Part shown: piece by piece, positions 22,392-64,000 of the stretch
How positions within the stretch are numbered: the first letter of the stretch is position 1
Layout of the letters: the number at the start of each line of letters is the position of its first letter
Translations under genes and position numbers: made by a program
Virus record (IMG/VR): IMGVR_UViG_3300045256_000050
Location: 180,987-244,986 of that record
Length of the DNA stretch: 64,000 nucleotides
Reading direction: 5' to 3' (one strand)
Notes under the pieces: generated by a model
What the model saw: the letters and a program-made list of their open reading frames with translations, nothing else
What the model was told of the DNA's origin: nothing
Database searches by the model: none

Positions 22392-22877
22392 TTAACTCAA
22401 ACACTTCATGTTCTCCCAAACGTGGTACTCGTCGTCGTCTTGCACCACGCCTACCTTCCTCATCCCCGCCTTTCCGAACAACCTGTCGTAGATCGCCGCC
22501 CTCTGGTTCGTTGGCTCCTTCTCCACCCCATCCACCGTCTTTCGCTTCTCCGGGGTGTACACCATCCTCAAGCCCGCCTTCGACAACTCCCCTCCGAACT
22601 CTTGCAACTTCCGCATGAGCGGCATGGTACTCGGCTGAACCGACTTCGACACGGTACTCAGGTCTGCACCCAAATCGTCAGTGTTAAAGAACGCCACGAT
22701 GACGTAGGGGATGTTGCTGGCGTTGTCCGGTCCTCGGAGTTGGGCGTAGATGGTTTTGTCGAGGAACGGTATCCAGTACACGTCGTTTTCGGGCTGGATG
22801 TTGCCGAACACCTTCTGGACGACGGCGTGGAGTCGGTCTTGCTGCTCCTCGTTTTCGAGCCATGTCTTGAAACGCAT
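22392..22877 (-). CDS. Putative internal virion protein (CTS-like N-terminus)
   Basis: Starts MRFKTWLENEE; TAGATA 4 nt before ATG. Confidence 0.7.
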   Translation of the reverse strand: MRFKTWLENEEQQDRLHAVVQKVFGNIQPENDVYWIPFLDKTIYAQLRGPDNASNIPYVIVAFFNTDDLGADLSTVSKSVQPSTMPLMRKLQEFGGELSKAGLRMVYTPEKRKTVDGVEKEPTNQRAAIYDRLFGKAGMRKVGVVQDDDEYHVWENMKCLS

Positions 22878-22972
22878 ATCGTATCTATCCGGTCGGGTCT
22901 GTCAATCCCCGGCGAATAAAAATTTCCGGTTTTCCGTCCGAAAACAGAACCCAGCCGACTAACTAATACCAG

Positions 22973-32802: not shown

Positions 32803-33528
32803 CTAAGTGTATACCGCAGGTCTTTCGATTGGTTTTTCCATATCGTCCTGCACCGGGCTGGGAATCGCTTCGATCTTTTTCCACCGTCTCTTCTTCTTGC
32901 CGATGAAGTCAGCCGTTTTGATGTGCTGCTTCTGCTGGTTCTCTTCAGTCTCGTCCGGCCCCAGGAGGCGGCTCGGGATGCCCATCTTGTCGTTGGCGAA
33001 GTTCCGGGTGCCCGGCCCGAACACCTGATACGGCGTGATGTTCTCGTTGTGAACCCACGGCTCGTCGAAGTTGTCCGGCAGGGTCGGGTACTTCGGCTTG
33101 AACTCCCCGAACAACTGGTTCAACTTCTCCTTCATGTCGAGCAGGTGGTTGCAGACCGTCAGTTTGTTAATGTGGCGACTGTGGTTGCCGTAGCCCCGGA
33201 GTTCCAGGTCGGCGTCCGTGTCGATGGTCAGGTTCGGGCGGTTGTCCGGCCGGTGCTTCCAGCCCTCGCCGTGGGCGGCGGGCATCGTCTCTGAGTGGAC
33301 GGCGGTGAATTTCGTCTTCAGTACGCTGTCCAGGTCGAGGTTGTGGAACTTACGGCCCTCGTCCCGCTCCCGGTCCCACCGGCTCTGGAGGAATTTGAAG
33401 TCGGCCGGGTGTGGCTGTGCGTATGCCCAATCGAAAGCGTCCGACGGCAGCAGCATGTTGCCGTAAAACCAGTCGCTACCGGCGTCGGAGAACCCGTCTT
33501 CGAGTAAGAGCCATTCCTTGAAACCCAT
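32803..33528 (-). CDS. Putative internal virion protein (CTS-like N-terminus)
   Basis: MGFKEWLLLED; TAGATA 5 nt before ATG. Confidence 0.7.
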   Translation of the reverse strand: MGFKEWLLLEDGFSDAGSDWFYGNMLLPSDAFDWAYAQPHPADFKFLQSRWDRERDEGRKFHNLDLDSVLKTKFTAVHSETMPAAHGEGWKHRPDNRPNLTIDTDADLELRGYGNHSRHINKLTVCNHLLDMKEKLNQLFGEFKPKYPTLPDNFDEPWVHNENITPYQVFGPGTRNFANDKMGIPSRLLGPDETEENQQKQHIKTADFIGKKKRRWKKIEAIPSPVQDDMEKPIERPAVYT

Positions 33529-33541
33529 GAGGGTATCTACG

Positions 33542-34354
33542 TTAGTAGTTCATCCAAATGCACTCGATCCGGCGAGCTTTTTTCTTCCCCTGGCCCGAAT
33601 GGTTCGCCATGTCCTTCTTGGACATCCGCCACCCCTTGAAGAACTTGTTGTACAACGGGGACGGGTAGCCGCTGACGATCACCTTCGCCCGTGCGTCCTT
33701 CACCAAGTTCAACAAGTCCAGGTGGTCTTCCTCGGACATCTCGAAGTCGTAGGCGGACGTGGCGGTGCGGGTTTCCGGCAGGTACGGCGGGTCGATGTAG
33801 ATCAGGACGCCCTCCTCGTTCCACATCTTGATGGCCTTACGGAAGTCGGCGTGCAGGATGGAGACGTTCTTGATCCGCTCGGCCAACATCGGCAGGTGCT
33901 TAATCATCGTCTCCCAGGCGTTCACGTCGCCGGGCTTCCCGCCCCGCATTCGGTCGCTCCAGGCGAAGGCTTTCTTCAGCCCGCCCCGGCTCATCCGACG
34001 AAGGGTGTATTCATTAACAGCTTGATCTACATAGTCGTCAAACTTGTGTTCGGCCTTCTCCAGAGCCTTCTCGAACGACGCCTCGCTGTACTTGATCTTC
34101 TTGAGCCGGTCGATGAACTCCTGTGGCTCGTCCCGGACCGCCTTGAAGATGCACAGGAGGTTCTTGTCGATGTCTGAGATCACTTCTTCGCTGGCCGACT
34201 CCTTGTTGAACAGCACGCTCGCCGCCCCGCAACAGGGTTCGAGGTACTTGAGTTCGGTGTAGTTCTTGGGGAAGTGTTCGATAACCCACGAACTGAGATA
34301 AGCTTTGCCTCCGTGCAGCTTCACAATCGGTCTGAGTTTATTCTTGTTCGTCAT
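33542..34354 (-). CDS. dam: DNA adenine methyltransferase (Dam/D12 class)
   Basis: GGKAYL, YLEPCCGAASV, ISDID, YIDPPY, VIVSGY. Confidence 0.92.
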   Translation of the reverse strand: MTNKNKLRPIVKLHGGKAYLSSWVIEHFPKNYTELKYLEPCCGAASVLFNKESASEEVISDIDKNLLCIFKAVRDEPQEFIDRLKKIKYSEASFEKALEKAEHKFDDYVDQAVNEYTLRRMSRGGLKKAFAWSDRMRGGKPGDVNAWETMIKHLPMLAERIKNVSILHADFRKAIKMWNEEGVLIYIDPPYLPETRTATSAYDFEMSEEDHLDLLNLVKDARAKVIVSGYPSPLYNKFFKGWRMSKKDMANHSGQGKKKARRIECIWMNY

Positions 34355-42651: not shown

Positions 42652-42654
42652 CCA

Positions 42655-43050
42655 TTATTTAGCAGCGGCTTTGGCGGGTTTGGCTTCTTCGAGGATCGCA
42701 TTGACGTTGTGAATCTCGATCAGGGCCAGCTTCTTGTCGGTGAACTGCTTGGCTTCCTGCAAGAGCTTCGGACGGACGCCGAGGAGAACACGGTCGCCGA
42801 CGTTGAGCTTCACGTCTTCCTGCTTGACGCACGGGCCGAAGGCCACGATGTAAGCCTGCTCGCTGCCGACCTTAGCGTCTTCCTTCAGGTAGAGCTTGGT
42901 CGCCAGTACGGCTTCCGGGTTAATGAGTTCTACGAGAATCGTAGAGCCAGCCGGGCGGATGCCGGTGATCGCCGGGACGCTTGCTACGCTCGTCTCTTCC
43001 TTGTCATTCTTGCCGGGGAGGAAGACGCCACCATCTGTTTTTTTAACCAT
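42655..43050 (-). CDS. groES: GroES/Cpn10-like co-chaperonin with N-terminal extension
   Basis: IRPAGSTILVE, AYIVAFGP, LNVGDRVL, VNAILE match the Cpn10 strand order. Confidence 0.7.
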   Translation of the reverse strand: MVKKTDGGVFLPGKNDKEETSVASVPAITGIRPAGSTILVELINPEAVLATKLYLKEDAKVGSEQAYIVAFGPCVKQEDVKLNVGDRVLLGVRPKLLQEAKQFTDKKLALIEIHNVNAILEEAKPAKAAAK

Positions 43051-53732: not shown

Positions 53733-55232
53733 GTGCGTTACCACATTCGACCACAGCACCATTACATGCCGAGCTTGGCAAACTACGGTCATTCGTGGGG
53801 CCGGAGCAACGTTGCGTCTGCTGTCCCGGACAGCATCCAGACCGGGCCGTATGAGAATCAGGCCAGATCATTCCGACCGAGAGGCGCACCCGGCAAGGCG
53901 TACTTCCTCTACGATCCGGGAGACAACGGACAACCGGAACACCGCTGGCTCGCCAAGTGGAGTATGTTACCCAGCATGTACGAAGGGACGGGTGCGACCG
54001 TCTCTTTCGGCTTCAAGTGGAGCGGGCAGCAGGGCCACGTCATGTGGTTCGGCGACGTGACTAATGAGTTTCCCCAGGGGATCGAGGCGAAGATCACCTT
54101 CGAATCGGAAATCTCTCAATTCTTCCTACGCTTCGGCATCTTTGTCAATGCTACGGAGTCTGTGGGCACTGTCACGGCTCCGCTGATCTCGGGCGAGGAT
54201 TACCACTTCACGGCTGTGTTTCTGCCGGAGATTGTAAACCTCGGCGAGTTTAGCGGCATCGGGCGGTGGAGGATATACCGAAATGGTCTGCTCGTTGACA
54301 GCAGTTCCACCACTGGCTTCAACAACATCGACATCAGCATCACGACGCCTAGCTCCTTCTACGTCGGGACTGATTACCTGGGCGACCGGCTGTTCAACAG
54401 CCCGATCTACGATTTGAAGATGTTCTACCGGCCTCTCAGCCACAACGAGGTATGGAACAGTTACTTCTACGATTACATCAAGGAACAGAAACAAGTCCCG
54501 CTGACCGCCCTGGCTGTTGAATCAGACGGCCCAGACCGGACAGCTTCCGGCGGGGCAAGGGTTGGCGGTAACGGTGACGTAACGGCCGACTATGACATCG
54601 TTGCTGACGGCGGTGCTGTACTTGCTGGTATGGCCGACGAATTCTACGTCCACAACGGCAGCGTTGTGTATGATGAGTTCGCATCGGGCGGTGCCGTACT
54701 GGCCGGTTCGGCAGTTGTAAGAAAGATCGTCCCGTTCAGTGTAACGGGTGGTGCCGTACTGGCCGGTTCGGCAGTTGTAAGAAAGACGTTCAGACACACC
54801 GCAACGGGCGGGGCGGTGGTAGCCGGGTTCGCACTGAGAACGGCCAACTACTTCGTCCAAACGACCGGCGGCATCGAGGCAGGCGGGTCGCTGACAACCA
54901 TCGCTACCGAATACGCTTCTGGCGGCGTGTCGTGCGGCGGCAGCTTTGTACTGAAGAGAGGCACGGTACGTCCGAAGCGGCAGAGCGAGTGCTTTGACGC
55001 AAAGGTGTGCAAGCTACGGATTCAACAGATTGGTTCACTCAGTCGTCGAGTTTACATTGAAGACCAATGTCGTCGGCCGTTCCGTCTGTGGGATGGTTAT
55101 GTGCCGGGTGCGGCGTCGTGCCCAGGCGAAATACAGTTCACCCGCATTCTGAAGGTTCAGACGGCAGTCGGGTACAAGAACCCGAGGGATAGAGGCAAAT
55201 TGCCTAACAGTAACTTCGGCGACGTGAGATAA
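53733..55232 (+). CDS. Virion protein: LamG/ConA-like domain + Gly repeats + Cys C-terminus
   Basis: DYHFTAVF...IYRNG...FYVG...IYDLKMFYRPLS..EV LamG pattern; TGGAVLAG repeats; GTG start. Confidence 0.75.
   Translation: MRYHIRPQHHYMPSLANYGHSWGRSNVASAVPDSIQTGPYENQARSFRPRGAPGKAYFLYDPGDNGQPEHRWLAKWSMLPSMYEGTGATVSFGFKWSGQQGHVMWFGDVTNEFPQGIEAKITFESEISQFFLRFGIFVNATESVGTVTAPLISGEDYHFTAVFLPEIVNLGEFSGIGRWRIYRNGLLVDSSSTTGFNNIDISITTPSSFYVGTDYLGDRLFNSPIYDLKMFYRPLSHNEVWNSYFYDYIKEQKQVPLTALAVESDGPDRTASGGARVGGNGDVTADYDIVADGGAVLAGMADEFYVHNGSVVYDEFASGGAVLAGSAVVRKIVPFSVTGGAVLAGSAVVRKTFRHTATGGAVVAGFALRTANYFVQTTGGIEAGGSLTTIATEYASGGVSCGGSFVLKRGTVRPKRQSECFDAKVCKLRIQQIGSLSRRVYIEDQCRRPFRLWDGYVPGAASCPGEIQFTRILKVQTAVGYKNPRDRGKLPNSNFGDVR
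54690..54786 (+). repeat. Intragenic direct repeat, 37 nt x2, 60-nt period
   Basis: GGTGCCGTACTGGCCGGTTCGGCAGTTGTAAGAAAGA at 54690 and 54750. Confidence 0.9.
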
Positions 55233-57151
55233 TGAGCGAAGAAGCCCCACTACTCGGATCGGACTCGGCCGTCTTAGGCACGATGTCCATTGGTGAAACG
55301 GATGCCCAGACGGCGTACACCGCCGCCCTGGGTACGTCCGACTCCACGTTCGGGTACATGGTGATGGGCGTCCCGCCGACCACCGACGACAACTTCACTT
55401 CGATCCTCGGTATCGAAGCGTCCCGGCCCGCCAACATTGAACCCGCAGCAGTCGAAGACGCCGCCCGTTATGACGAAGTGGCGTCCGGTGGTGTGGTCGT
55501 CGGCGGTGGCAACCGGATTTACAACGAAGTCGGTTCTGGTGGTGTTCTCGGCGGCGGTACGGCTCGCTTCGGCCGGATCATTAACTCGGCCAACATCGTT
55601 AACGCATCCGGTGTGCGTGGCGGCGGCACGGCCCGCTTCAACTGGTTCGTCTACCGCACGGCGAGCGGCGGTGCCGTCGTCGGCGGGTTCAGCCCGGCCG
55701 AACACGGCATCATTCCGAGCGGCGGGGCCAAAGTCGGTGGCAGCTTCATCAACCAGCACATTCTGGCTCGTACTGCAACCGGCGGTGCCCGACCGGGTGG
55801 TTTGTGCATTAACACCGTTCGTTTGGTGTACACCGCTACGGGTGGTGCTAAGGGTGGCGGTATCGGTGATCCGACTTACACCCCAGGCGTGTTCGTCGGT
55901 GGTACGGCCACGAACACCCAGATCATGCCCCGTGTGGCATCGGGTGGTGGTCGTGTTGGCGGTACGGCCGTTCTCGGCGGTAACACAACCTTCGTGGCGG
56001 CGGGCGGTGCCCGTCCGGGTGGTACGGCTCGGTTCAACACCATCAAACCTGCTTTCGTTGCGAGCGGCGGTGCGGTTGTATCTGGTAGCGGTAACGATAC
56101 TGAAGATCATCCGGGGTTGTTCGGCGATGGCGGCGTGGTCGTCGGTGGTTCCGCAACTCGCCAGTTCTATGCGATGTGGGTCGCTACAGGCGGGGCACGG
56201 GTCGGCGGCTCGGTGCCCACCATTGAGTACATCTCCCAGGTCGCCACCGGCGGCGTGGTGTGTGCAGGTATTGCGGTTGTGGAGGCCGGGACGTTCACCT
56301 TCGGCGGGGCCGACGTGGGCGGATCGGCTACCATCCAGATCACGTCAAACAAGACGGGGACCGGCGGGGCTGTCTGTGCTGGTGTGTCTCTTACCCGACA
56401 CTTGTTACGGTATATCTCTACGGGCGGCGGCGTGTGCAGCGGCCATGCGAATCCGTTCGGCACGGCCCGAGACTACACGGCCACGGGCGGGTTCCGGGCT
56501 GGCGGACCGCTGGTTCTGTTCTCGATCTTCAACATCCGCCCGCAAGGTGGGGCACGGCCCGGCGGCACCGCCATCCCAAACACGACCATCAGAACTTCTG
56601 GTGGAGCGGTGTGTGCAGGTACGGCCCGAGTTGTTAAAGTCCAAGTTGCCCAGACATCGGGCGGCGTGGTCTGCGGCGGTGCTACGCAGCCGATCAGTTA
56701 CATTGGCACCTACGGCGGGGCTGTGGTCAGCGGCCAAGCCACCATCAACAACTTCATGTATCGGACGGCCTCGGGCGGTGCGGTGTGTGGGGGCACGGCT
56801 GTCGCCAGCTTGGTCACTGTTTCTTATGTCGCCTCGGGTGGTGCGGTGGCTGGCGGTTCGGGCGAATTCAAACGAGACACGTCGGGTCGAATCCGGTGTG
56901 AGCCGCCTGCCCTGGCCTGCCCGATCATCAAGGTGAAGCCGCCGGGTCGCCCGTGCGTCAAGGAGAAGGTGCTGCGTGGCGGCATCGTTCTGGCGGCGAC
57001 GGTGTGCAAGTACAACAAGAAGGTCGGGAAGCTGTTGAAAGACCCGGCCAACACCCAGACCATCACCCAAACGGCCATCGGCTTCAGTTCGGGCAACAGG
57101 TCTACACCGTACCAGCCGCCGGGCACCCCGAAACCGGGACAGCCGCTCTGA
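55232..57151 (+). CDS. Gly-rich repeat virion/fibre protein
   Basis: More than 20 (S/T)GGAVxGG units; Cys-containing C-terminus; paralogue of 15568-17340. Confidence 0.8.
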   Translation: MSEEAPLLGSDSAVLGTMSIGETDAQTAYTAALGTSDSTFGYMVMGVPPTTDDNFTSILGIEASRPANIEPAAVEDAARYDEVASGGVVVGGGNRIYNEVGSGGVLGGGTARFGRIINSANIVNASGVRGGGTARFNWFVYRTASGGAVVGGFSPAEHGIIPSGGAKVGGSFINQHILARTATGGARPGGLCINTVRLVYTATGGAKGGGIGDPTYTPGVFVGGTATNTQIMPRVASGGGRVGGTAVLGGNTTFVAAGGARPGGTARFNTIKPAFVASGGAVVSGSGNDTEDHPGLFGDGGVVVGGSATRQFYAMWVATGGARVGGSVPTIEYISQVATGGVVCAGIAVVEAGTFTFGGADVGGSATIQITSNKTGTGGAVCAGVSLTRHLLRYISTGGGVCSGHANPFGTARDYTATGGFRAGGPLVLFSIFNIRPQGGARPGGTAIPNTTIRTSGGAVCAGTARVVKVQVAQTSGGVVCGGATQPISYIGTYGGAVVSGQATINNFMYRTASGGAVCGGTAVASLVTVSYVASGGAVAGGSGEFKRDTSGRIRCEPPALACPIIKVKPPGRPCVKEKVLRGGIVLAATVCKYNKKVGKLLKDPANTQTITQTAIGFSSGNRSTPYQPPGTPKPGQPL

Positions 57152-58826: not shown

Positions 58827-59726
58827 TTACTTCGTCTTGGCAGGAGCGGTGACGCCCGTGTCCACGACTCGTTGCAACGCCACTGCAACATCTCGGCCGG
58901 AGGCCGACTGCAACGCTTGGGAGGCAACTTCCTTCGCATCGCTTCTTGCCTGGGCCAGTTGGGCTTGCAGGTCTTTGATCTGGTCTTGTAGGGACGTGAT
59001 CGTCTCGTCCATCGCCGATACCCGAATCTGGTGCAGGTTCTTCTCGGCGTCGAAGTCCTTCTTGAGCAGTGCCATCTCGTGATCGTACTGCTTCTTCAGG
59101 GTGTTGCTGAGGACCGCTTCGGCCTTCGCCACTTCCGTCTTCAACCGCTGATCGAAGCCAGCGACCTGTGCCTGGAGGTTGGTGAACTCCTGCTCCTTAG
59201 CCTTGATGGCGGCATCCCGCTCCTTCCAGCTACGCTCCAGGGTTTCACTGCGTAGAGCCTCGTCCCGCTTCTTCTTGTTCATCTCGGCGTCGAACTCGTC
59301 GTACTGCTTCTTCTTCAGTTGCTCGAAGTTGTAACGGTACTCGTCCTCGGCCCGCTGGAGACGGCGGTTCCGCTCGTTTTCCTCTTCGTCCCACTCCTGC
59401 TCACGCTCGTTACGCTGAGCGTTCCACTCCTGCTGCTCTGCCTCACGCTGGGCCTTCATGTCGTCCAGGGTGACGGCTTCGCTCTCGATGTTGTGGAGTT
59501 CCTTGAGCCGCTGGTTCTTGAGGGCGATTGCCGTCTCAAGGTTCTGCATCTCTTGAATCTTGCTCGACAGGGCACCGCTCAGGTTAGCCAGCGATTCTTG
59601 AACAGAAACCTGCAAGGTGCCGACTTCTGCGATCACGGACTGAAGGTTAAGACCCTTCACTGAATCAAGCACAGCCTGTGCTTCGGTTGCTTCGATCTTT
59701 TTGTTCTTGTTGCCTTTGGTAGCCAT
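58827..59726 (-). CDS. Long coiled-coil protein
   Basis: E/K/Q/R-rich heptads over most of 299 aa; GAAAGGA SD. Confidence 0.8.
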   Translation of the reverse strand: MATKGNKNKKIEATEAQAVLDSVKGLNLQSVIAEVGTLQVSVQESLANLSGALSSKIQEMQNLETAIALKNQRLKELHNIESEAVTLDDMKAQREAEQQEWNAQRNEREQEWDEEENERNRRLQRAEDEYRYNFEQLKKKQYDEFDAEMNKKKRDEALRSETLERSWKERDAAIKAKEQEFTNLQAQVAGFDQRLKTEVAKAEAVLSNTLKKQYDHEMALLKKDFDAEKNLHQIRVSAMDETITSLQDQIKDLQAQLAQARSDAKEVASQALQSASGRDVAVALQRVVDTGVTAPAKTK

Positions 59727-59800
59727 TGTAGTTTCCTTTCGGTTGTTGACAGTTGTAGGTTGTTTTCGTAACATGCGATCAGAAACTTGAGCGGGGGTTG

Positions 59801-59806
59801 TAAATA
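59801..59806 (+). promoter_or_regulatory. T4-like late promoter core (representative of about 20 copies)
   Basis: TAAATA; variants TAGATA, TATATA and TAACTA recur in intergenic gaps upstream of virion-type genes. Confidence 0.6.
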
Positions 59807-59810
59807 AAAC

Positions 59811-60443
59811 ATGACTAGCTTCAAAGAGTTCTTCGAGGCCAACGACCCGATGACGGGCATCCCGCACACCGTCAAGACGGCGACCGTGCCCGCCCCCGCA
59901 ACACCGCCCGCTCCTCGCAACACGATGACGCAACAGATGGATCAGCGTGTCCAGACGGGCAAAGGCTACGAGGCCAAGATTATTCAGAAGCTCATCTCGG
60001 GCGGGCTGAAGATCACGCCCGTGACCGGCCGACAGGACATGTTCGATAAGATCGACGGCATCTGGGAGAACGGCCCGGCCGGGTCCGGCGGGATGCAGAT
60101 CAAGTACCGTGACAGCGGCTACGACATCCTGATGGAAGTTCGGAAGGGTAGCAACCCAGGCCGGGACATGGTGGGCAAGAGCGTGTACTACACGGTCGTC
60201 CCGAAGGACGGTGAGTTCGCCTACATCTTCAAGACGGTGGACTTGAAGAAGCTGGTGCAGGACGCATTGAATGAGCTACAGCAGGACGGCGGCTTCGGCG
60301 GGAAGCGGGAGTTTCATTCGAGCGATCAGGTCGAACTGCGGCAGACCCGTGACCCGGCCGACAACACGCCGAAAATCATGGCCTTCATCCCGATTGACGT
60401 GCCTGTTCCGATTCGCCGCCAGCGAGTCAACCTGTTCAAATAA
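59811..60443 (+). CDS. CTS-like leader + PD-(D/E)xK nuclease-like fold protein
   Basis: MTSFKEFFEAN leader; GYEAKI...DKIDG...MQIKYR; TAAATA 4 nt before ATG. Confidence 0.6.
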   Translation: MTSFKEFFEANDPMTGIPHTVKTATVPAPATPPAPRNTMTQQMDQRVQTGKGYEAKIIQKLISGGLKITPVTGRQDMFDKIDGIWENGPAGSGGMQIKYRDSGYDILMEVRKGSNPGRDMVGKSVYYTVVPKDGEFAYIFKTVDLKKLVQDALNELQQDGGFGGKREFHSSDQVELRQTRDPADNTPKIMAFIPIDVPVPIRRQRVNLFK

Positions 60444-60470
60444 AAAACGCCGGGTTCAGCCCGGCGTTTT
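60444..60470. terminator. Bidirectional terminator
   Basis: AAAACGCCGGG-TTCAG-CCCGGCGTTTT. Confidence 0.85.
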
Positions 60471-60574
60471 CGTTATCATCCAGAGGATGAACAGGCTCAC
60501 CATCCAGAAGATCATTAAGCCCAAGTCCTGTTTCCACGACAGCATTCGGTACAACTCTCGGTCGAGCCAATCCA

Positions 60575-60907
60575 TCATAGCTCCGGCCACTTTTGCCGCA
60601 CGAGAGGGATGTCTATCTTTTTCCATCCTGCCTCCTGGTTGAGTGCCCTGGCTCTTGCTTTCTCCAGCCGCTCGTCTTCGATCTTCGGGACCAACTCGGC
60701 CCACAGGGCGTCCAGGTTCATCTCCTGCCAGTTCTCCACCGACACTTTGAGTAAGCGTGCGGCGTCAACGGCCCGGATGTACCTATTCCCCTTTCGCAGC
60801 ACCATTCCCCAGAGGGAGTCGTGCCACTCGGTCCAGTTCTCTGCGAGGTACTTGTCTTGCTCCTCGGGAGATAGCTTTCTGAAGTCTTCCGGGGTCATCA
60901 TCACCAA
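60575..60907 (-). CDS. Hypothetical protein
   Basis: GGAGG SD; operon context. Confidence 0.55.
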   Translation of the reverse strand: MVMMTPEDFRKLSPEEQDKYLAENWTEWHDSLWGMVLRKGNRYIRAVDAARLLKVSVENWQEMNLDALWAELVPKIEDERLEKARARALNQEAGWKKIDIPLVRQKWPEL

Positions 60908-61320
60908 CCTCCAACATGCGAGTCGTAGTATTCCACCACGACGTTGTACACCTTCTGGTGTCCTTTTAGCTCCGGGAAGCCGCTCACGTCGAACGTGGCC
61001 CGAATGAGGTAGCTCCGGTGCGGGTAGGTCATTCGCTGGTCACGCTGGATGGTGCAGTGCGGTTCGAGGAGTTTTTCCAGCCCGTCCCAATCGTCGTACT
61101 GGCAGCGACTCGTGAAGAGTTCGTAGTTGATGTGGAAGGGTGAAATGGGTGGGACGTGTCCCACGCCCCACTGGCCGTAGCCCTCGTACCTTTCACTAAA
61201 AGCAACGCCGCTAAGCTCCTTCAGCTTAGCGGCGGCTCTAATCGCCCACGCATGGTCGGCGAGTCGTTCGTGTTTCATCTGCTCGTAGGCAGCTTCCAGT
61301 TCTTGTTGCGTAAACATCAC
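60901..61320 (-). CDS. Hypothetical protein
   Basis: Coupled ORF in operon. Confidence 0.55.
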   Translation of the reverse strand: MMFTQQELEAAYEQMKHERLADHAWAIRAAAKLKELSGVAFSERYEGYGQWGVGHVPPISPFHINYELFTSRCQYDDWDGLEKLLEPHCTIQRDQRMTYPHRSYLIRATFDVSGFPELKGHQKVYNVVVEYYDSHVGGW

Positions 61321-61736
61321 TTCAAATGGCGAGCCATTGCCTTTCCAAAAGATTCGTCGCTGTACCAGCCGGTTTCACCCTTGTCGTAGTTGTGGCAGCC
61401 GAAATACTTGTCGGGGTCGCCCTCGACGGTGTACCGGGCCACCCAGCCGGATTCTTCATCCTTGTAGTCCACGTTCGGGTTGTCCCATGTCTCGTAAACC
61501 ACTTCGAGCTTGGCGATCAGGATTTCTTTGCCGTTCCGTTTCTTGAACAGCTTGTCGCCCCGCCGCTTGATCCCCTTCACGCCGTCGAACTCGGACAGAG
61601 CCTTGTCTACGGTTTCTTGGAGCGTCTTGCGACGTGCCTCTTCGTACTTGCGTGAGGCTTCTTCTCTCTCCTCACGCTTCTTCTGCTCGGCCTTCTGCTT
61701 CTTGATCTCTTCTTTGGCGAAGTCCAGTGCGCTCAT
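61317..61736 (-). CDS. Hypothetical protein
   Basis: From MSALDFAKEE; GAGG SD. Confidence 0.6.
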   Translation of the reverse strand: MSALDFAKEEIKKQKAEQKKREEREEASRKYEEARRKTLQETVDKALSEFDGVKGIKRRGDKLFKKRNGKEILIAKLEVVYETWDNPNVDYKDEESGWVARYTVEGDPDKYFGCHNYDKGETGWYSDESFGKAMARHLK

Positions 61737-62994: not shown

Positions 62995-63237
62995 GGCGGC
63001 ACCAGGATGTATTGTAGGAGAAAAACCCGAAATCACAACGCTTCCTTCACCCATTCTACACGATGTTATCGTATAACATCGGCGTCGAACTTACAAAAAG
63101 GAGAGATGTTATGAAAAGGAAGGGTTAGCGAACAGTTGAACCGAAATCTGGGTAAATCTACGGAAACCTCAAGGAAAATCTTTCCAAATTCGTGATTTCC
63201 AGACCAGAAATTCAGGGTTAGCCCTCTAAATAACATC

Positions 63238-64000
63238 ATGCTCGTAGTGGAACGACACCACATTGCCGGAAATGACACGATCATCCGGCTCTGCTCAAAC
63301 TCAAAGGAATTGTACAACCAGTGCAATTTCCTCATGAGACACGCTTGGTTCGGCGGCAACCCACTACCCGACATCAACATCCTTGTCACCGCCGTCAAGG
63401 ACACCGACTGCTTCAAGAACCTCCACAATACCAAGACGGCGAAGCAGACAGTACGCAAGTGCCTGACCGATTGGAAGAACTTTAGGAAGACACTCAACGC
63501 CTACACGAAAGACCCGACCAAGTTCGTCAAGCGACCGAAACCACCATACTACAAGGAGAAGCTGGCTCAGGTCATCTTCTACAACGAAACCATCAAGGGA
63601 GGGCAAAACAAGAAGAAGGCGAAACCCAACACGATCACGCCCACCAATGACTGTTTCGGGATTCAGAGCCAGAGGCAGTACAAGCAGGTGATCCTGACGC
63701 CCAAGAGGTTCGGGTTCGTCGTGGACGTTCAGTATGAACAACCTGCACAACCGAGAAGCAAGGCAAAAGGCATAGCGTGCGTTGACATCGGGTTGAACAA
63801 CTTGTGTGCGATAACATCAGACCAGACAACGACTTCCATACTGGTCAACGGTCGCATCTGCAAGAGCATCAACCAGAAGTTCAACAAGCACAACACCAAG
63901 CGAGAAAGCAAGAAACGGTACTTTAGGTTGGAGAACTACTTTCACCACGTCAGCAAGTTCCTGATCCAATTTTGCCTGAAGCATGGTATCGGGACAATCA
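63238..64000 (+). CDS. tnpB: Second TnpB (IS605 OrfB type), truncated by window end
   Basis: Manual translation MLVVERHHI...SKELYNQCN...RPKPPYYK...ACVDIGLNNL (RuvC I)...NYFHHVSKFLIQFC; absent from the ORF track because it has no stop; TAAATA 5 nt before ATG. Confidence 0.9.
   Translation, partial: MLVVERHHIAGNDTIIRLCSNSKELYNQCNFLMRHAWFGGNPLPDINILVTAVKDTDCFKNLHNTKTAKQTVRKCLTDWKNFRKTLNAYTKDPTKFVKRPKPPYYKEKLAQVIFYNETIKGGQNKKKAKPNTITPTNDCFGIQSQRQYKQVILTPKRFGFVVDVQYEQPAQPRSKAKGIACVDIGLNNLCAITSDQTTTSILVNGRICKSINQKFNKHNTKRESKKRYFRLENYFHHVSKFLIQFCLKHGIGTI

What the first reader, a model, noticed from the sequence alone, without database searches (positions are those of the whole stretch)
59801..60470. 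Putative capsid-packaged restriction-like nuclease
Seen: a monocistronic unit with TAAATA, the best CTS-like leader (MTSFKEFFEA), a Pro/Thr linker, then E...(DKI)D...Q-I-K spacing typical of PD-(D/E)xK folds, and a terminator. The genome also has a Dam-like methylase. Inference: a nuclease injected with the DNA to attack unmodified host or competitor DNA or RNA, with self protected by modification.
Basis: inference. Interest (0 to 1): 0.65.

Follow-up and report, generated by a model that had tools for sequence, protein, structure and literature searches.

The report
Capsid-tagged phage nuclease linked to CGCG avoidance
A giant T4-like phage from a hot-spring mat encodes a small restriction-enzyme-fold nuclease that carries the short tag T4 uses to load proteins into its capsid, and phages with this nuclease family almost always lack the DNA word CGCG, which suggests an injected weapon the phage escapes by not having the target site.

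Summary

- **Fold.** The protein belongs to a large, unannotated, phage-specific PD-(D/E)xK family of 404 clusters. The AF2 core is confident, and the best fold hits are I-Ssp6803I, Hjc and PvuII.
- **Tag.** The leader matches the experimentally defined T4 capsid-targeting sequence: aromatics at positions 4 and 7, then a hydrophobic residue and Glu. It heads at least 8 unrelated ORFs here and more in related megaphages. In the five large records tested, it occurs only where a T4-type prohead protease is present.
- **Status of packaging.** Packaging is well supported but inferred, not shown.
- **Self-protection.** Protection by methylation is not supported. Instead the genome has zero CGCG sites (about 1,700 expected) and lacks 38 of 64 palindromic hexamers. 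CGCG is absent from 11 of 13 family-bearing contigs against 6 of 40 random viral contigs (p about 1e-5).

My reading is a late-made, capsid-loaded, injected nuclease, possibly directed at CGCG, with self-immunity by site absence. Overall confidence is about 0.5.

The parts
59799..59806 (+). TGTAAATA box (TAAATA at 59801-59806), 4 nt upstream of the ATG. It resembles the T4 late promoter and implies a leaderless or near-leaderless late transcript (inferred).
   Evidence: The genome-wide TA[AG]ATA-N3-6-ATG arrangement occurs at 15 ORFs, 6 of them tagged. It is also present before homologues in L015/L017 and before tagged genes of G001.
59811..60443 (+). Gene for the 210-aa tagged PD-(D/E)xK nuclease (P0001); the end coordinate includes the stop codon.
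59811..59840 (+). N-terminal tag MTSFKEFFEA (aa 1-10): F4 and F7 are the targeting pair, F8-E9 then A10 is the putative prohead-protease site.
   Evidence: T4 CTS sequence and determinants. PSSM scan of all ORF starts. Peptide-level rather than mRNA-level conservation.
59841..59933 (+). Disordered Pro/Thr/Ala-rich linker (aa 11-41). Many homologues have an 'RRGPxPGAFGK' motif here instead.
   Evidence: pLDDT below 50 for residues 14-41; variable in alignments.
59934..60440 (+). PD-(D/E)xK core domain (aa 42-210).
   Evidence: AF2 core pLDDT above 90. Fold hits: I-Ssp6803I Z 8.1, Hjc 7.7, NhoI 7.7, PvuII 7.4. Foldseek. ESM Atlas and BFVD phage clusters.
59970..59972 (+). Codon for E54 (helix 1 glutamate).
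   Evidence: 156 of 156 sequences. Aligns to the Glu of 'GssvER' in Hjc ST1444, which I take from memory to be the catalytic one.
60054..60056 (+). Codon for D82 (start of core strand 2; the 'PD' aspartate).
   Evidence: 159 of 159 sequences. Aligns within one residue of the Hjc 'PD'.
60096..60104 (+). Codons for Q96-I97-K98 (core strand 3; the '(D/E)xK' element with Q).
   Evidence: Q in 158 of 159 and K in 159 of 159 sequences. Aligns to 'EvK' of Hjc.
60444..60470 (.). GC-rich hairpin with an A-run and a T-run, between convergent genes; a likely bidirectional terminator.
   Evidence: dG -19.8 kcal/mol, z -5.8, 0 of 200 shuffles as stable.
22392..22877 (-). Another ORF with the same tag (MRFKTWLENEE..., 161 aa, no known family), preceded by TAGATA-N4-ATG.
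32803..33528 (-). Another tagged ORF (MGFKEWLLLED..., 241 aa), directly downstream of a Dam-like gene. All 25 family members carry the tag.
   Evidence: The AF2 model is poor.
33542..34354 (-).
   Evidence: G000 214618-215298.

Best explanation
The gene encodes a small metal-dependent nuclease of the restriction-endonuclease (PD-(D/E)xK) fold. It belongs to a large phage-only family that has no annotation. In T4-like megaphages the enzyme is fused, through a floppy linker, to a 10-residue N-terminal tag equivalent to the T4 capsid targeting sequence. Proposed course (all inferred): the gene is transcribed late from a TA(A/G)ATA box that abuts the start codon. The tag's aromatic pair (F4, F7) docks the protein on the scaffolding core of the prohead. 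The gp21-type prohead protease removes the tag after Glu9. The roughly 21-kDa basic enzyme stays in the head with the DNA and is injected with it. In the new host it cuts resident DNA. The phage's own DNA is spared because it lacks the target; the best candidate target is CGCG, which is absent from this genome and from nearly all genomes that carry the family. My sub-probabilities are: PD-(D/E)xK fold 0.9; active nuclease 0.7; tag is a capsid-targeting signal and the protein is packaged 0.65; CGCG-directed with immunity by site absence 0.35.
For: Fold: AF2 model with pLDDT 82.7 and core above 90. 16 of the top 17 structural matches are PD-(D/E)xK nucleases, and Foldseek's top hit is I-Ssp6803I. 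A profile of 122 members hits Hjc ST1444 at E = 0.006, with E54, D82 and Q96-x-K98 on Hjc's E, PD and ExK. Weak member hits are to PDDEXK_5, RE_MjaI and Mrr_cat. E54, D82, Q96 and K98, plus R100, D105, E109, R118, D119 and K188, are invariant or nearly so in 159 sequences.
Tag: the T4 CTS is MKTYQEFIAE, with targeting at residues 4 and 7 and processing at 8 and 10. Here F4 and F7 are followed by F8-E9 then A10. Eight ORF N-termini in the genome score at least 14 bits with the leader PSSM, against 0 of 123,482 internal 10-mers. The same tag heads at least 9 ORFs in G001 and at least 5 in G003. Synonymous codons vary, so selection acts on the peptide.
Head machinery: the genome has a T4-type portal, protease, scaffold and gp23 module. 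Tagged homologues lie in records with Peptidase_S77 (3 of 3 tested, plus G000 itself). Untagged homologues lie in large records without it (2 of 2, one of them 99% complete). Six of the 15 ORFs with a start-adjacent TA[AG]ATA box are tagged.
CGCG: 0 sites in 245 kb against about 1,700 expected. CGCG is the most depleted tetramer in 14 family-bearing lineages of 30-64% GC, while the second most depleted word varies. Zero CGCG in 11 of 13 family-bearing contigs against 6 of 40 quasi-random viral contigs, Fisher p about 1e-5.
Against: There is no direct evidence of virion presence, cleavage or activity. The second acidic position is Gln, not Asp or Glu, although it is invariant. The only binding test (scaffold with tag) gave no verdict. 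About 90 of 159 family representatives have no tag, so the enzyme does not need packaging to be useful. The CGCG link is a correlation. 15% of random viral contigs also lack CGCG, and these phages avoid many palindromes, which host restriction alone could explain. Lineages are not fully independent; a conservative count is 5 of 7 groups (p about 1e-3). Four family-bearing contigs do contain CGCG (L045, L152, L170, L171). A nuclease stored beside 500 kb of DNA needs a safeguard that has not been demonstrated.
Confidence: 0.5

Rival explanations
1. It is a cytoplasmic phage nuclease that is not packaged. The shared N-terminal leader serves some other purpose, for example efficient translation of leaderless late mRNAs, a regulatory or degradation signal, or binding to another assembly factor.
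For: Most family members work without any leader. The tagged genes share a start-adjacent promoter-like box, so the 5' end of the coding region could be under mRNA-level constraint. No virion data exist. The complex test gave no verdict.
Against: Tag codons vary synonymously and the anchor shifts by 1-2 residues, which argues for peptide-level selection. The two near-invariant tag positions are exactly the T4 targeting positions 4 and 7. The tag co-occurred with the gp21-type protease and was missing where that protease was missing, in the five records tested.
Confidence: 0.2
2. It is a structure-specific nuclease, an Hjc-like junction resolvase, that clears branched DNA during replication or packaging rather than a weapon against host DNA.
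For: Hjc resolvases are among the best structural and sequence matches (Z 7.7, 6.6, 5.9, 5.5; E = 0.006). The many invariant polar residues fit a fixed, sequence-independent substrate. A resolvase would be harmless to linear packaged DNA.
Against: Z scores are similar for homing endonucleases and restriction enzymes, so the fold does not discriminate. It does not explain the link to CGCG absence. A resolvase loaded inside the head has no obvious substrate there.
Confidence: 0.1
3. It is a catalytically dead or weak DNA-binding internal protein. It has the restriction fold with Gln at the second acidic position, and acts as a DNA-condensing or anti-defence protein like the T4 internal proteins.
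For: Q96 replaces the canonical Asp/Glu. The protein is basic (pI 9.2) like the T4 internal proteins. T4 IPI is an inhibitor, not an enzyme.
Against: E54, D82, K98 and further acidic residues (D76, D105, E109, D119) are invariant over 159 sequences at 25-35% identity, which is typical of an active site. From memory, not verified here: HinP1I and MspI are active with D...(Q/N)xK.
Confidence: 0.1
4. It is a free-standing homing endonuclease of the I-Ssp6803I type, a selfish gene with its own promoter and terminator inserted between phage genes.
For: I-Ssp6803I is the top fold match. The gene is a stand-alone unit on the opposite strand to its neighbours. Its position relative to the capsid gene varies among relatives, from 8 kb to 115 kb.
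Against: Both near-complete genomes of the clade have it. It shares its N-terminal tag with many unrelated proteins. Strong conservation of many polar residues across distant phages is not what variable long-target recognition predicts.
Confidence: 0.07

Closest known systems
T4 internal proteins (IPI, IPII, IPIII) and Alt with their capsid targeting sequence (CTS)
   Same: A short N-terminal propeptide with aromatic residues at positions 4 and 7, then a hydrophobic residue and Glu. It is shared by otherwise unrelated, fast-evolving proteins in a phage with a gp21-type protease, a gp22-like scaffold and a gp23 capsid protein.
   Different: The cargo here is a restriction-fold nuclease, not an inhibitor or an ADP-ribosyltransferase. 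The tag sequence differs (consensus MxxFKxWLE vs MKTYQEFIAE), and Glu is at position 9 rather than 10. The host phages are megaphages of about 500 kb. Loading and cleavage are untested.
[quoted passage not shown]
   Same: A virus-encoded restriction-type nuclease carried in the particle, thought to degrade host DNA within minutes of entry (PMC7019647).
   Different: Chloroviruses infect algae and have no T4-type tag system. Their endonuclease genes always sit next to a cognate methyltransferase that protects viral DNA. Here no methyltransferase is adjacent, and the suggested protection is absence of the site.
Engineered CTS fusions in T4 (staphylococcal nuclease, EcoRI)
   Same: A nuclease placed behind a CTS is loaded into the head and delivered on infection.
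   Different: Those are laboratory constructs. This would be a natural counterpart.
Minimal PD-(D/E)xK nucleases: Hjc resolvases, I-Ssp6803I, PvuII, NhoI/Eco15I N-domain, HinP1I/MspI
   Same: Same core fold and catalytic layout: Glu in helix 1, Asp at the start of strand 2, xK in strand 3.
   Different: No significant sequence membership in any Pfam family of these enzymes. Gln takes the (D/E) position. There is an extra C-terminal beta-sheet and many family-specific invariant residues.
Phage P1 Dar (defence against restriction) capsid proteins
   Same: Head-internal proteins loaded during assembly and injected to deal with host nucleic-acid conflict (titles and abstracts).
   Different: Dar proteins protect phage DNA and are not nucleases of this fold. 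The loading hierarchy is different, and no T4-type CTS is involved.

Membership tests
PD-(D/E)xK phosphodiesterase superfamily | [quoted passage not shown] | tested here: met
   AF2 core pLDDT above 90. 16 of the top 17 matches are PD-(D/E)xK nucleases, Z 5.5-8.1. The definition of the fold is taken from PMC3424549.
PD-(D/E)xK phosphodiesterase superfamily | Asp at the N-terminus of core strand 2, and (D/E)xK in strand 3, often with Glu from helix 1 | tested here: inconclusive
   E54 (helix 40-63), D82 (before strand 83-85) and K98 (strand 93-99) are invariant, but the (D/E) position is an invariant Gln. Variant motifs are known in the superfamily. Activity with Gln at this position is recalled from memory only.
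PD-(D/E)xK phosphodiesterase superfamily | Metal-dependent phosphodiester cleavage | not testable with these tools
   Needs an enzyme assay.
Any curated family (Pfam, PHROGs) | Score above the family threshold | tested here: not met
   No Pfam or PHROG hit for the protein. Only sub-threshold hits to PDDEXK_5, RE_MjaI and Mrr_cat in a few of 122 members.
T4-type capsid-targeting (CTS) cargo | N-terminal propeptide of 10-19 residues with the targeting residues at positions 4 and 7 | tested here: met
   F4 and F7 here. An aromatic pair at i and i+3 is the conserved core of 48 family leaders.
T4-type capsid-targeting (CTS) cargo | Processing site: a hydrophobic residue, then Glu about two residues later, cut after Glu by the prohead protease | tested here: inconclusive
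   F8-E9 then A10 here, against I8-A9-E10 in T4. All tagged ORFs have Glu at positions 8-13. The capsid protein's own propeptide contains WLMNE followed by A. Cleavage itself is untested.
T4-type capsid-targeting (CTS) cargo | Same tag on several unrelated proteins of one phage | tested here: met
   At least 8 ORFs in G000, at least 9 in G001 and at least 5 in G003. Most have no known family; one is tRNA-nucleotidyltransferase-like.
T4-type capsid-targeting (CTS) cargo | Phage has a gp21-type protease, a scaffolding core and a gp23-type shell | tested here: met
   Peptidase_S77 at E = 7e-27, Gp23 at E = 7e-85, and a coiled-coil ORF between them. The tag tracked the protease in the five related records tested.
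T4-type capsid-targeting (CTS) cargo | Protein found in proheads and virions, and processed | not testable with these tools
   Needs virion mass spectrometry. The predicted scaffold-tag complex gave no verdict.
Type II restriction-modification system | Cognate methyltransferase gene adjacent to the endonuclease gene | tested here: not met
   The neighbours are a coiled-coil protein and small unknown ORFs. The two D12 methyltransferases lie 26 kb and 106 kb away. No conserved partner was seen near homologues.
Type II restriction-modification system | Cleavage at a defined short sequence | not testable with these tools
   Indirect only: CGCG is absent from carrier genomes.
Homing endonuclease (I-Ssp6803I type) | Sporadic presence or absence at a fixed site, with cleavage of the empty allele | tested here: inconclusive
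   Position varies among relatives, but both near-complete genomes carry it. Empty alleles were not examined.

The most novel reading that the evidence does not exclude
A widespread, unrecognised class of phage 'restriction without modification'. Phages carry a conserved endonuclease directed at CGCG and stay immune simply by purging CGCG from their genomes. T4-like megaphages have gone a step further: they bolt on a capsid-targeting tag, so the enzyme is pre-loaded and injected with the DNA to hit host or rival DNA at the first moment of infection.
Probability: 0.3. Interest if true: 0.85.

Novelty: new variant of a known kind. Interest (0 to 1): 0.68.

Why it matters
If true, this would be the first natural bacteriophage counterpart of two things known separately: T4's capsid-targeting cargo system, and the virion-borne restriction enzymes of chloroviruses.

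It also offers a concrete explanation for an odd genomic signature, the total absence of CGCG in many environmental phages, as self-immunity to the phage's own nuclease rather than only escape from host enzymes.

In addition, it defines a portable tag consensus for a large clade of uncultured megaphages of about 500 kb. That tag lets one read off their whole set of injected proteins from sequence, and each step is testable with ordinary biochemistry.

Tried and rejected
- Direct Pfam and PHROG scans of the protein found nothing.
- tblastn and megablast against 50,697 deposited phage genomes found no match.
- The first PDB profile search with 14 sequences was not significant. The deeper profile gave Hjc at E = 0.006.
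- Predicted complex of the scaffold protein with residues 1-45: no verdict (score 0.02). This is neither for nor against binding.
- AF2 of the second tagged family next to the Dam-like gene was poor (pLDDT 50), so no fold search was run.
- Public runs: only DNA runs from hot-spring and mat samples hold the locus, and no RNA run does. Transcript ends could not be mapped, and read laying was not used.
- The metagenome scan with the deep alignment A2 failed for lack of a conserved stretch. A1 worked.
- The within-clade control had no power. Only 1 of 80 capsid-anchored loci contains the nuclease gene, and the CGCG-containing records are fragments.
- The HinP1I structure paper is not held. The D...QxK precedent therefore rests on memory.
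- An mRNA-level explanation of the tag was considered and rejected on codon evidence.

Full report
**What is at the coordinates.** The window is the last 64 kb of a 244,986-bp virus record that CheckV rates 48% complete, which implies a genome of about 500 kb. Public runs place it in hot-spring and microbial-mat metagenomes. ORF 59811..60443 (+) encodes 210 residues. It is the only + strand gene between a divergent coiled-coil gene (58827..59726, -) and convergent small genes on the minus strand, so it is a single-gene unit. TAAATA lies at 59801-59806, 4 nt before the ATG. A hairpin at 60444-60470 folds at -19.8 kcal/mol (z = -5.8). The consensus terminator scan missed it because the T-run pairs with an upstream A-run, which makes it look bidirectional.

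**The protein family.** Pfam, PHROGs and 50,697 deposited phage genomes give nothing.
- A word-seeded search found 13 hypothetical proteins.
- An exhaustive profile search found 404 cluster representatives at E <= 1e-3, of which 270 are at <= 1e-10.
- ESM Atlas clusters with the same shape are 91-97% viral, and BFVD matches are uncharacterised phage proteins.
- Across 159 sequences that share only 25-35% identity, the following are invariant or nearly so: R46, G50, E54, D76, K80, D82, Q96, K98, R100, G103, D105, E109, G117, R118, D119, Y127, D181 and K188.

**Fold and active site.**
- AlphaFold2 gives a confident model: mean pLDDT 82.7, core above 90, residues 14-41 disordered.
- An all-against-representatives structural search puts I-Ssp6803I (Z 8.1), Hjc (7.7), NhoI (7.7) and PvuII (7.4) on top. 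DpnI, MspI, HinP1I, HhaI and other PD-(D/E)xK enzymes fill 16 of the first 17 places. Foldseek agrees. The Z values are middling, so the case rests on the consistency of the hits.
- A profile of 122 members hits the Hjc resolvase ST1444 at E = 0.006. In that alignment E54 falls on the Glu of 'GssvER' (the catalytic one, by my recollection), 'KID' (D82) falls on 'vPD' with a one-residue offset, and 'QiKyR' falls on 'EvKsR'.
- This matches the published definition of the active site: Asp at the start of strand 2, (D/E)xK in strand 3, and Glu from helix 1 (PMC3424549).
- The one departure is an invariant Gln where Asp or Glu is expected. Active enzymes with D...(Q/N)xK exist by my recollection (HinP1I, MspI), but I could not verify this in the held literature.
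- A few members give sub-threshold hits to PDDEXK_5, RE_MjaI and Mrr_cat.
- I conclude that this is a new family inside the PD-(D/E)xK superfamily, probably active.

**The leader is a shared tag of the T4 CTS type.**
- About 48 of 157 representatives start with (M)x[S/T/N/D]-F-K-x-[W/F]-L-E. About 25 of these then carry 'RRGPxPGAFGK', and about 90 have no extension at all.
- A PSSM built from those leaders was run over every possible ORF start in the 245-kb genome. Eight N-termini score at least 14 bits, while none of 123,482 internal 10-mers does.
- The other tagged ORFs have no Pfam or PHROG family, apart from one protein resembling tRNA nucleotidyltransferase.
- Related megaphage records show the same: at least 9 tagged ORFs in G001 (consensus MxFKQFLxNE then G/S) and at least 5 in G003.
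- The codons of the tag vary synonymously. Leu uses six codons, and Phe and Lys codons follow each genome's GC content. The anchor also slides by one or two residues. Selection is therefore on the peptide, not the mRNA.
- The T4 CTS is MKTYQEFIAE (PMC8442874). Suppressor mutagenesis placed targeting at residues 4 and 7 and processing at residues 8 and 10 (PMC9026906).
- The leader here has F4 and F7, then F8-E9 followed by A10. The two conserved aromatic positions of the family leader are the same i and i+3 pair.

**Head machinery and co-occurrence.**
- The genome has a T4-type head module: portal, a Peptidase_S77 prohead protease (E = 7e-27), a coiled-coil scaffold and a Gp23 capsid protein (E = 7e-85).
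- The capsid propeptide contains WLMNE followed by A, which resembles the end of the tag.
- Tagged homologues L015, L017 and L018 lie in records with Peptidase_S77. Untagged homologues L023 and L024 lie in records of 317 kb (99% complete) and 238 kb that have none. This is a small sample of five records.

**The TAAATA box.** The hexamer count alone is not significant. However, TA[AG]ATA placed 3-6 nt before an ATG (4-5 nt in 13 cases) precedes 15 ORFs, against 0-4 for control hexamers. Six of the 15 are tagged. The same box, closer to T4's TATAAATA, precedes tagged genes in G001 and the homologues in L015 and L017. I infer late, leaderless or near-leaderless transcription, which fits a head component. 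No RNA data exist to test this.

**Self-protection.**
- Two Dam-like genes exist, but neither is next to this gene. GATC is not avoided (1286 vs 1489).
- The genome has no CGCG at all, against about 940 expected by a Markov model and about 1,730 by composition. It also has few GCGC and CTAG sites, and lacks 38 of the 64 palindromic hexamers.
- G001 lacks 45 of 64 palindromic hexamers. G001, G002, G003, G004 and G005 all have zero CGCG.
- In 14 lineages that carry the family, with GC from 30 to 64%, CGCG is the single most depleted of 136 tetramers after dinucleotide correction. The second most depleted word differs by lineage: GCGC, GATC, GGCC or TTAA. For example, L166 has 0 CGCG against 219 expected, while GGCC is at 228 vs 219.
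- The exceptions are L045 (GCGC absent instead), L152, and L170/171. L152 and L170/171 differ at otherwise near-invariant non-catalytic positions 46, 99, 103, 127, 146 and 181.

**Control for the CGCG link.**
- As a base rate I drew 119 quasi-random viral contigs with an arbitrary 14-mer. With corrected expectation of at least 10, 6 of 40 lack CGCG, against 11 of 13 length-matched carrier contigs (Fisher p about 1e-5).
- Collapsing related contigs to about seven groups leaves 5 of 7 (p about 1e-3).
- The link is therefore real but moderate. General restriction avoidance in these phages remains a rival cause.

**How common the clade is.** The capsid protein has 386 relatives at about 80% identity or more in IMG/VR, including records of 459 kb and 533 kb. 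Both of those carry the nuclease.

**Comparison with what is known.**
- The loading system is that of the T4 internal proteins.
- Nucleases have been loaded into T4 heads only by engineering, with staphylococcal nuclease and EcoRI.
- Chloroviruses naturally package restriction endonucleases that are thought to degrade host DNA within minutes, but these are paired with adjacent methyltransferases (PMC7019647).
- A phrase search for natural phage-packaged nucleases returned only the engineered T4 work. This is a limited search.

**Verdict.** Packaging and activity are unproven. Protection by modification is not supported; absence of a CGCG-type site is the better candidate. I rate this a new variant of known kinds (CTS cargo and PD-(D/E)xK nuclease), with a testable and more novel reading attached.

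Noticed in passing
whole genome G000 (window included); also G001, G002, G004, G005: Extreme palindrome avoidance. 38 of 64 palindromic hexamers are completely absent from 245 kb (21-146 expected each), CGCG is at 0, GCGC at 98 vs about 700-1,700, and CTAG at 101 vs 275-900. Only 60 of 4,032 non-palindromic hexamers are absent. G001 lacks 45 of 64.
   Followed up: partly
window 59799-59813, 22878-22891, 33529-33543, 42652-42661, 63227-63240; 15 places in G000: TA[AG]ATA sits 3-6 nt before the ATG (4-5 nt in 13 of 15 cases) with no Shine-Dalgarno sequence in between, which suggests leaderless late mRNAs from a T4-late-like promoter. The box is conserved in related megaphages.
   Followed up: partly
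G000 60106..61626 (-), outside the window (locus L010); a similar 503-aa gene at L045 7515-9026: A 506-aa protein resembling tRNA nucleotidyltransferase / poly(A) polymerase carries a weaker version of the same N-terminal tag (MLKKRTFREFVEE). It may be an injected RNA-repair or tailing enzyme.
   Followed up: no
window 32803..33528 (-) and 33542..34354 (-); G000 132434..133081 (-) and 134513-135082 (+): Each of the two Dam-like methyltransferase genes lies next to a tagged ORF of unknown function. The 241-aa family is always tagged (25 of 25 members). Its AF2 model was too poor to classify.
   Followed up: partly
homologues P0007-P0010, P0015, P0019, P0020, L015-L018: In many homologues from other phages, a conserved 'RRGPxPGAFGK' motif lies between the tag and the nuclease core. 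It is absent here, where a Pro/Thr linker replaces it. Other tagged proteins do not have it, so it is specific to this family. Its role is unknown.
   Followed up: no
window 63238..63999 (+), runs off the end: A TnpB/OrfB_IS605-like ORF sits at the contig end (Pfam OrfB_IS605, E = 6e-7, just under the cut-off). It is also preceded by TAAATA-N5-ATG, in a region of lower GC (0.52).
   Followed up: no
window 55232..57151 (+): A 639-aa protein built of many Gly-rich 'SGGAxxGG' repeats, downstream of a 499-aa protein with a weak Laminin_G_3 / ConA-like lectin match. They look like fibre or surface-binding proteins.
   Followed up: no
IMG/VR contigs L062-L141: The capsid protein defines a large environmental clade: 386 contigs at about 80% identity or more, GC 33-56%, with records up to 533 kb. 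CGCG absence is polymorphic within it (50 of 66 loci), and some members lack GCGC instead (L075, L102).
   Followed up: partly
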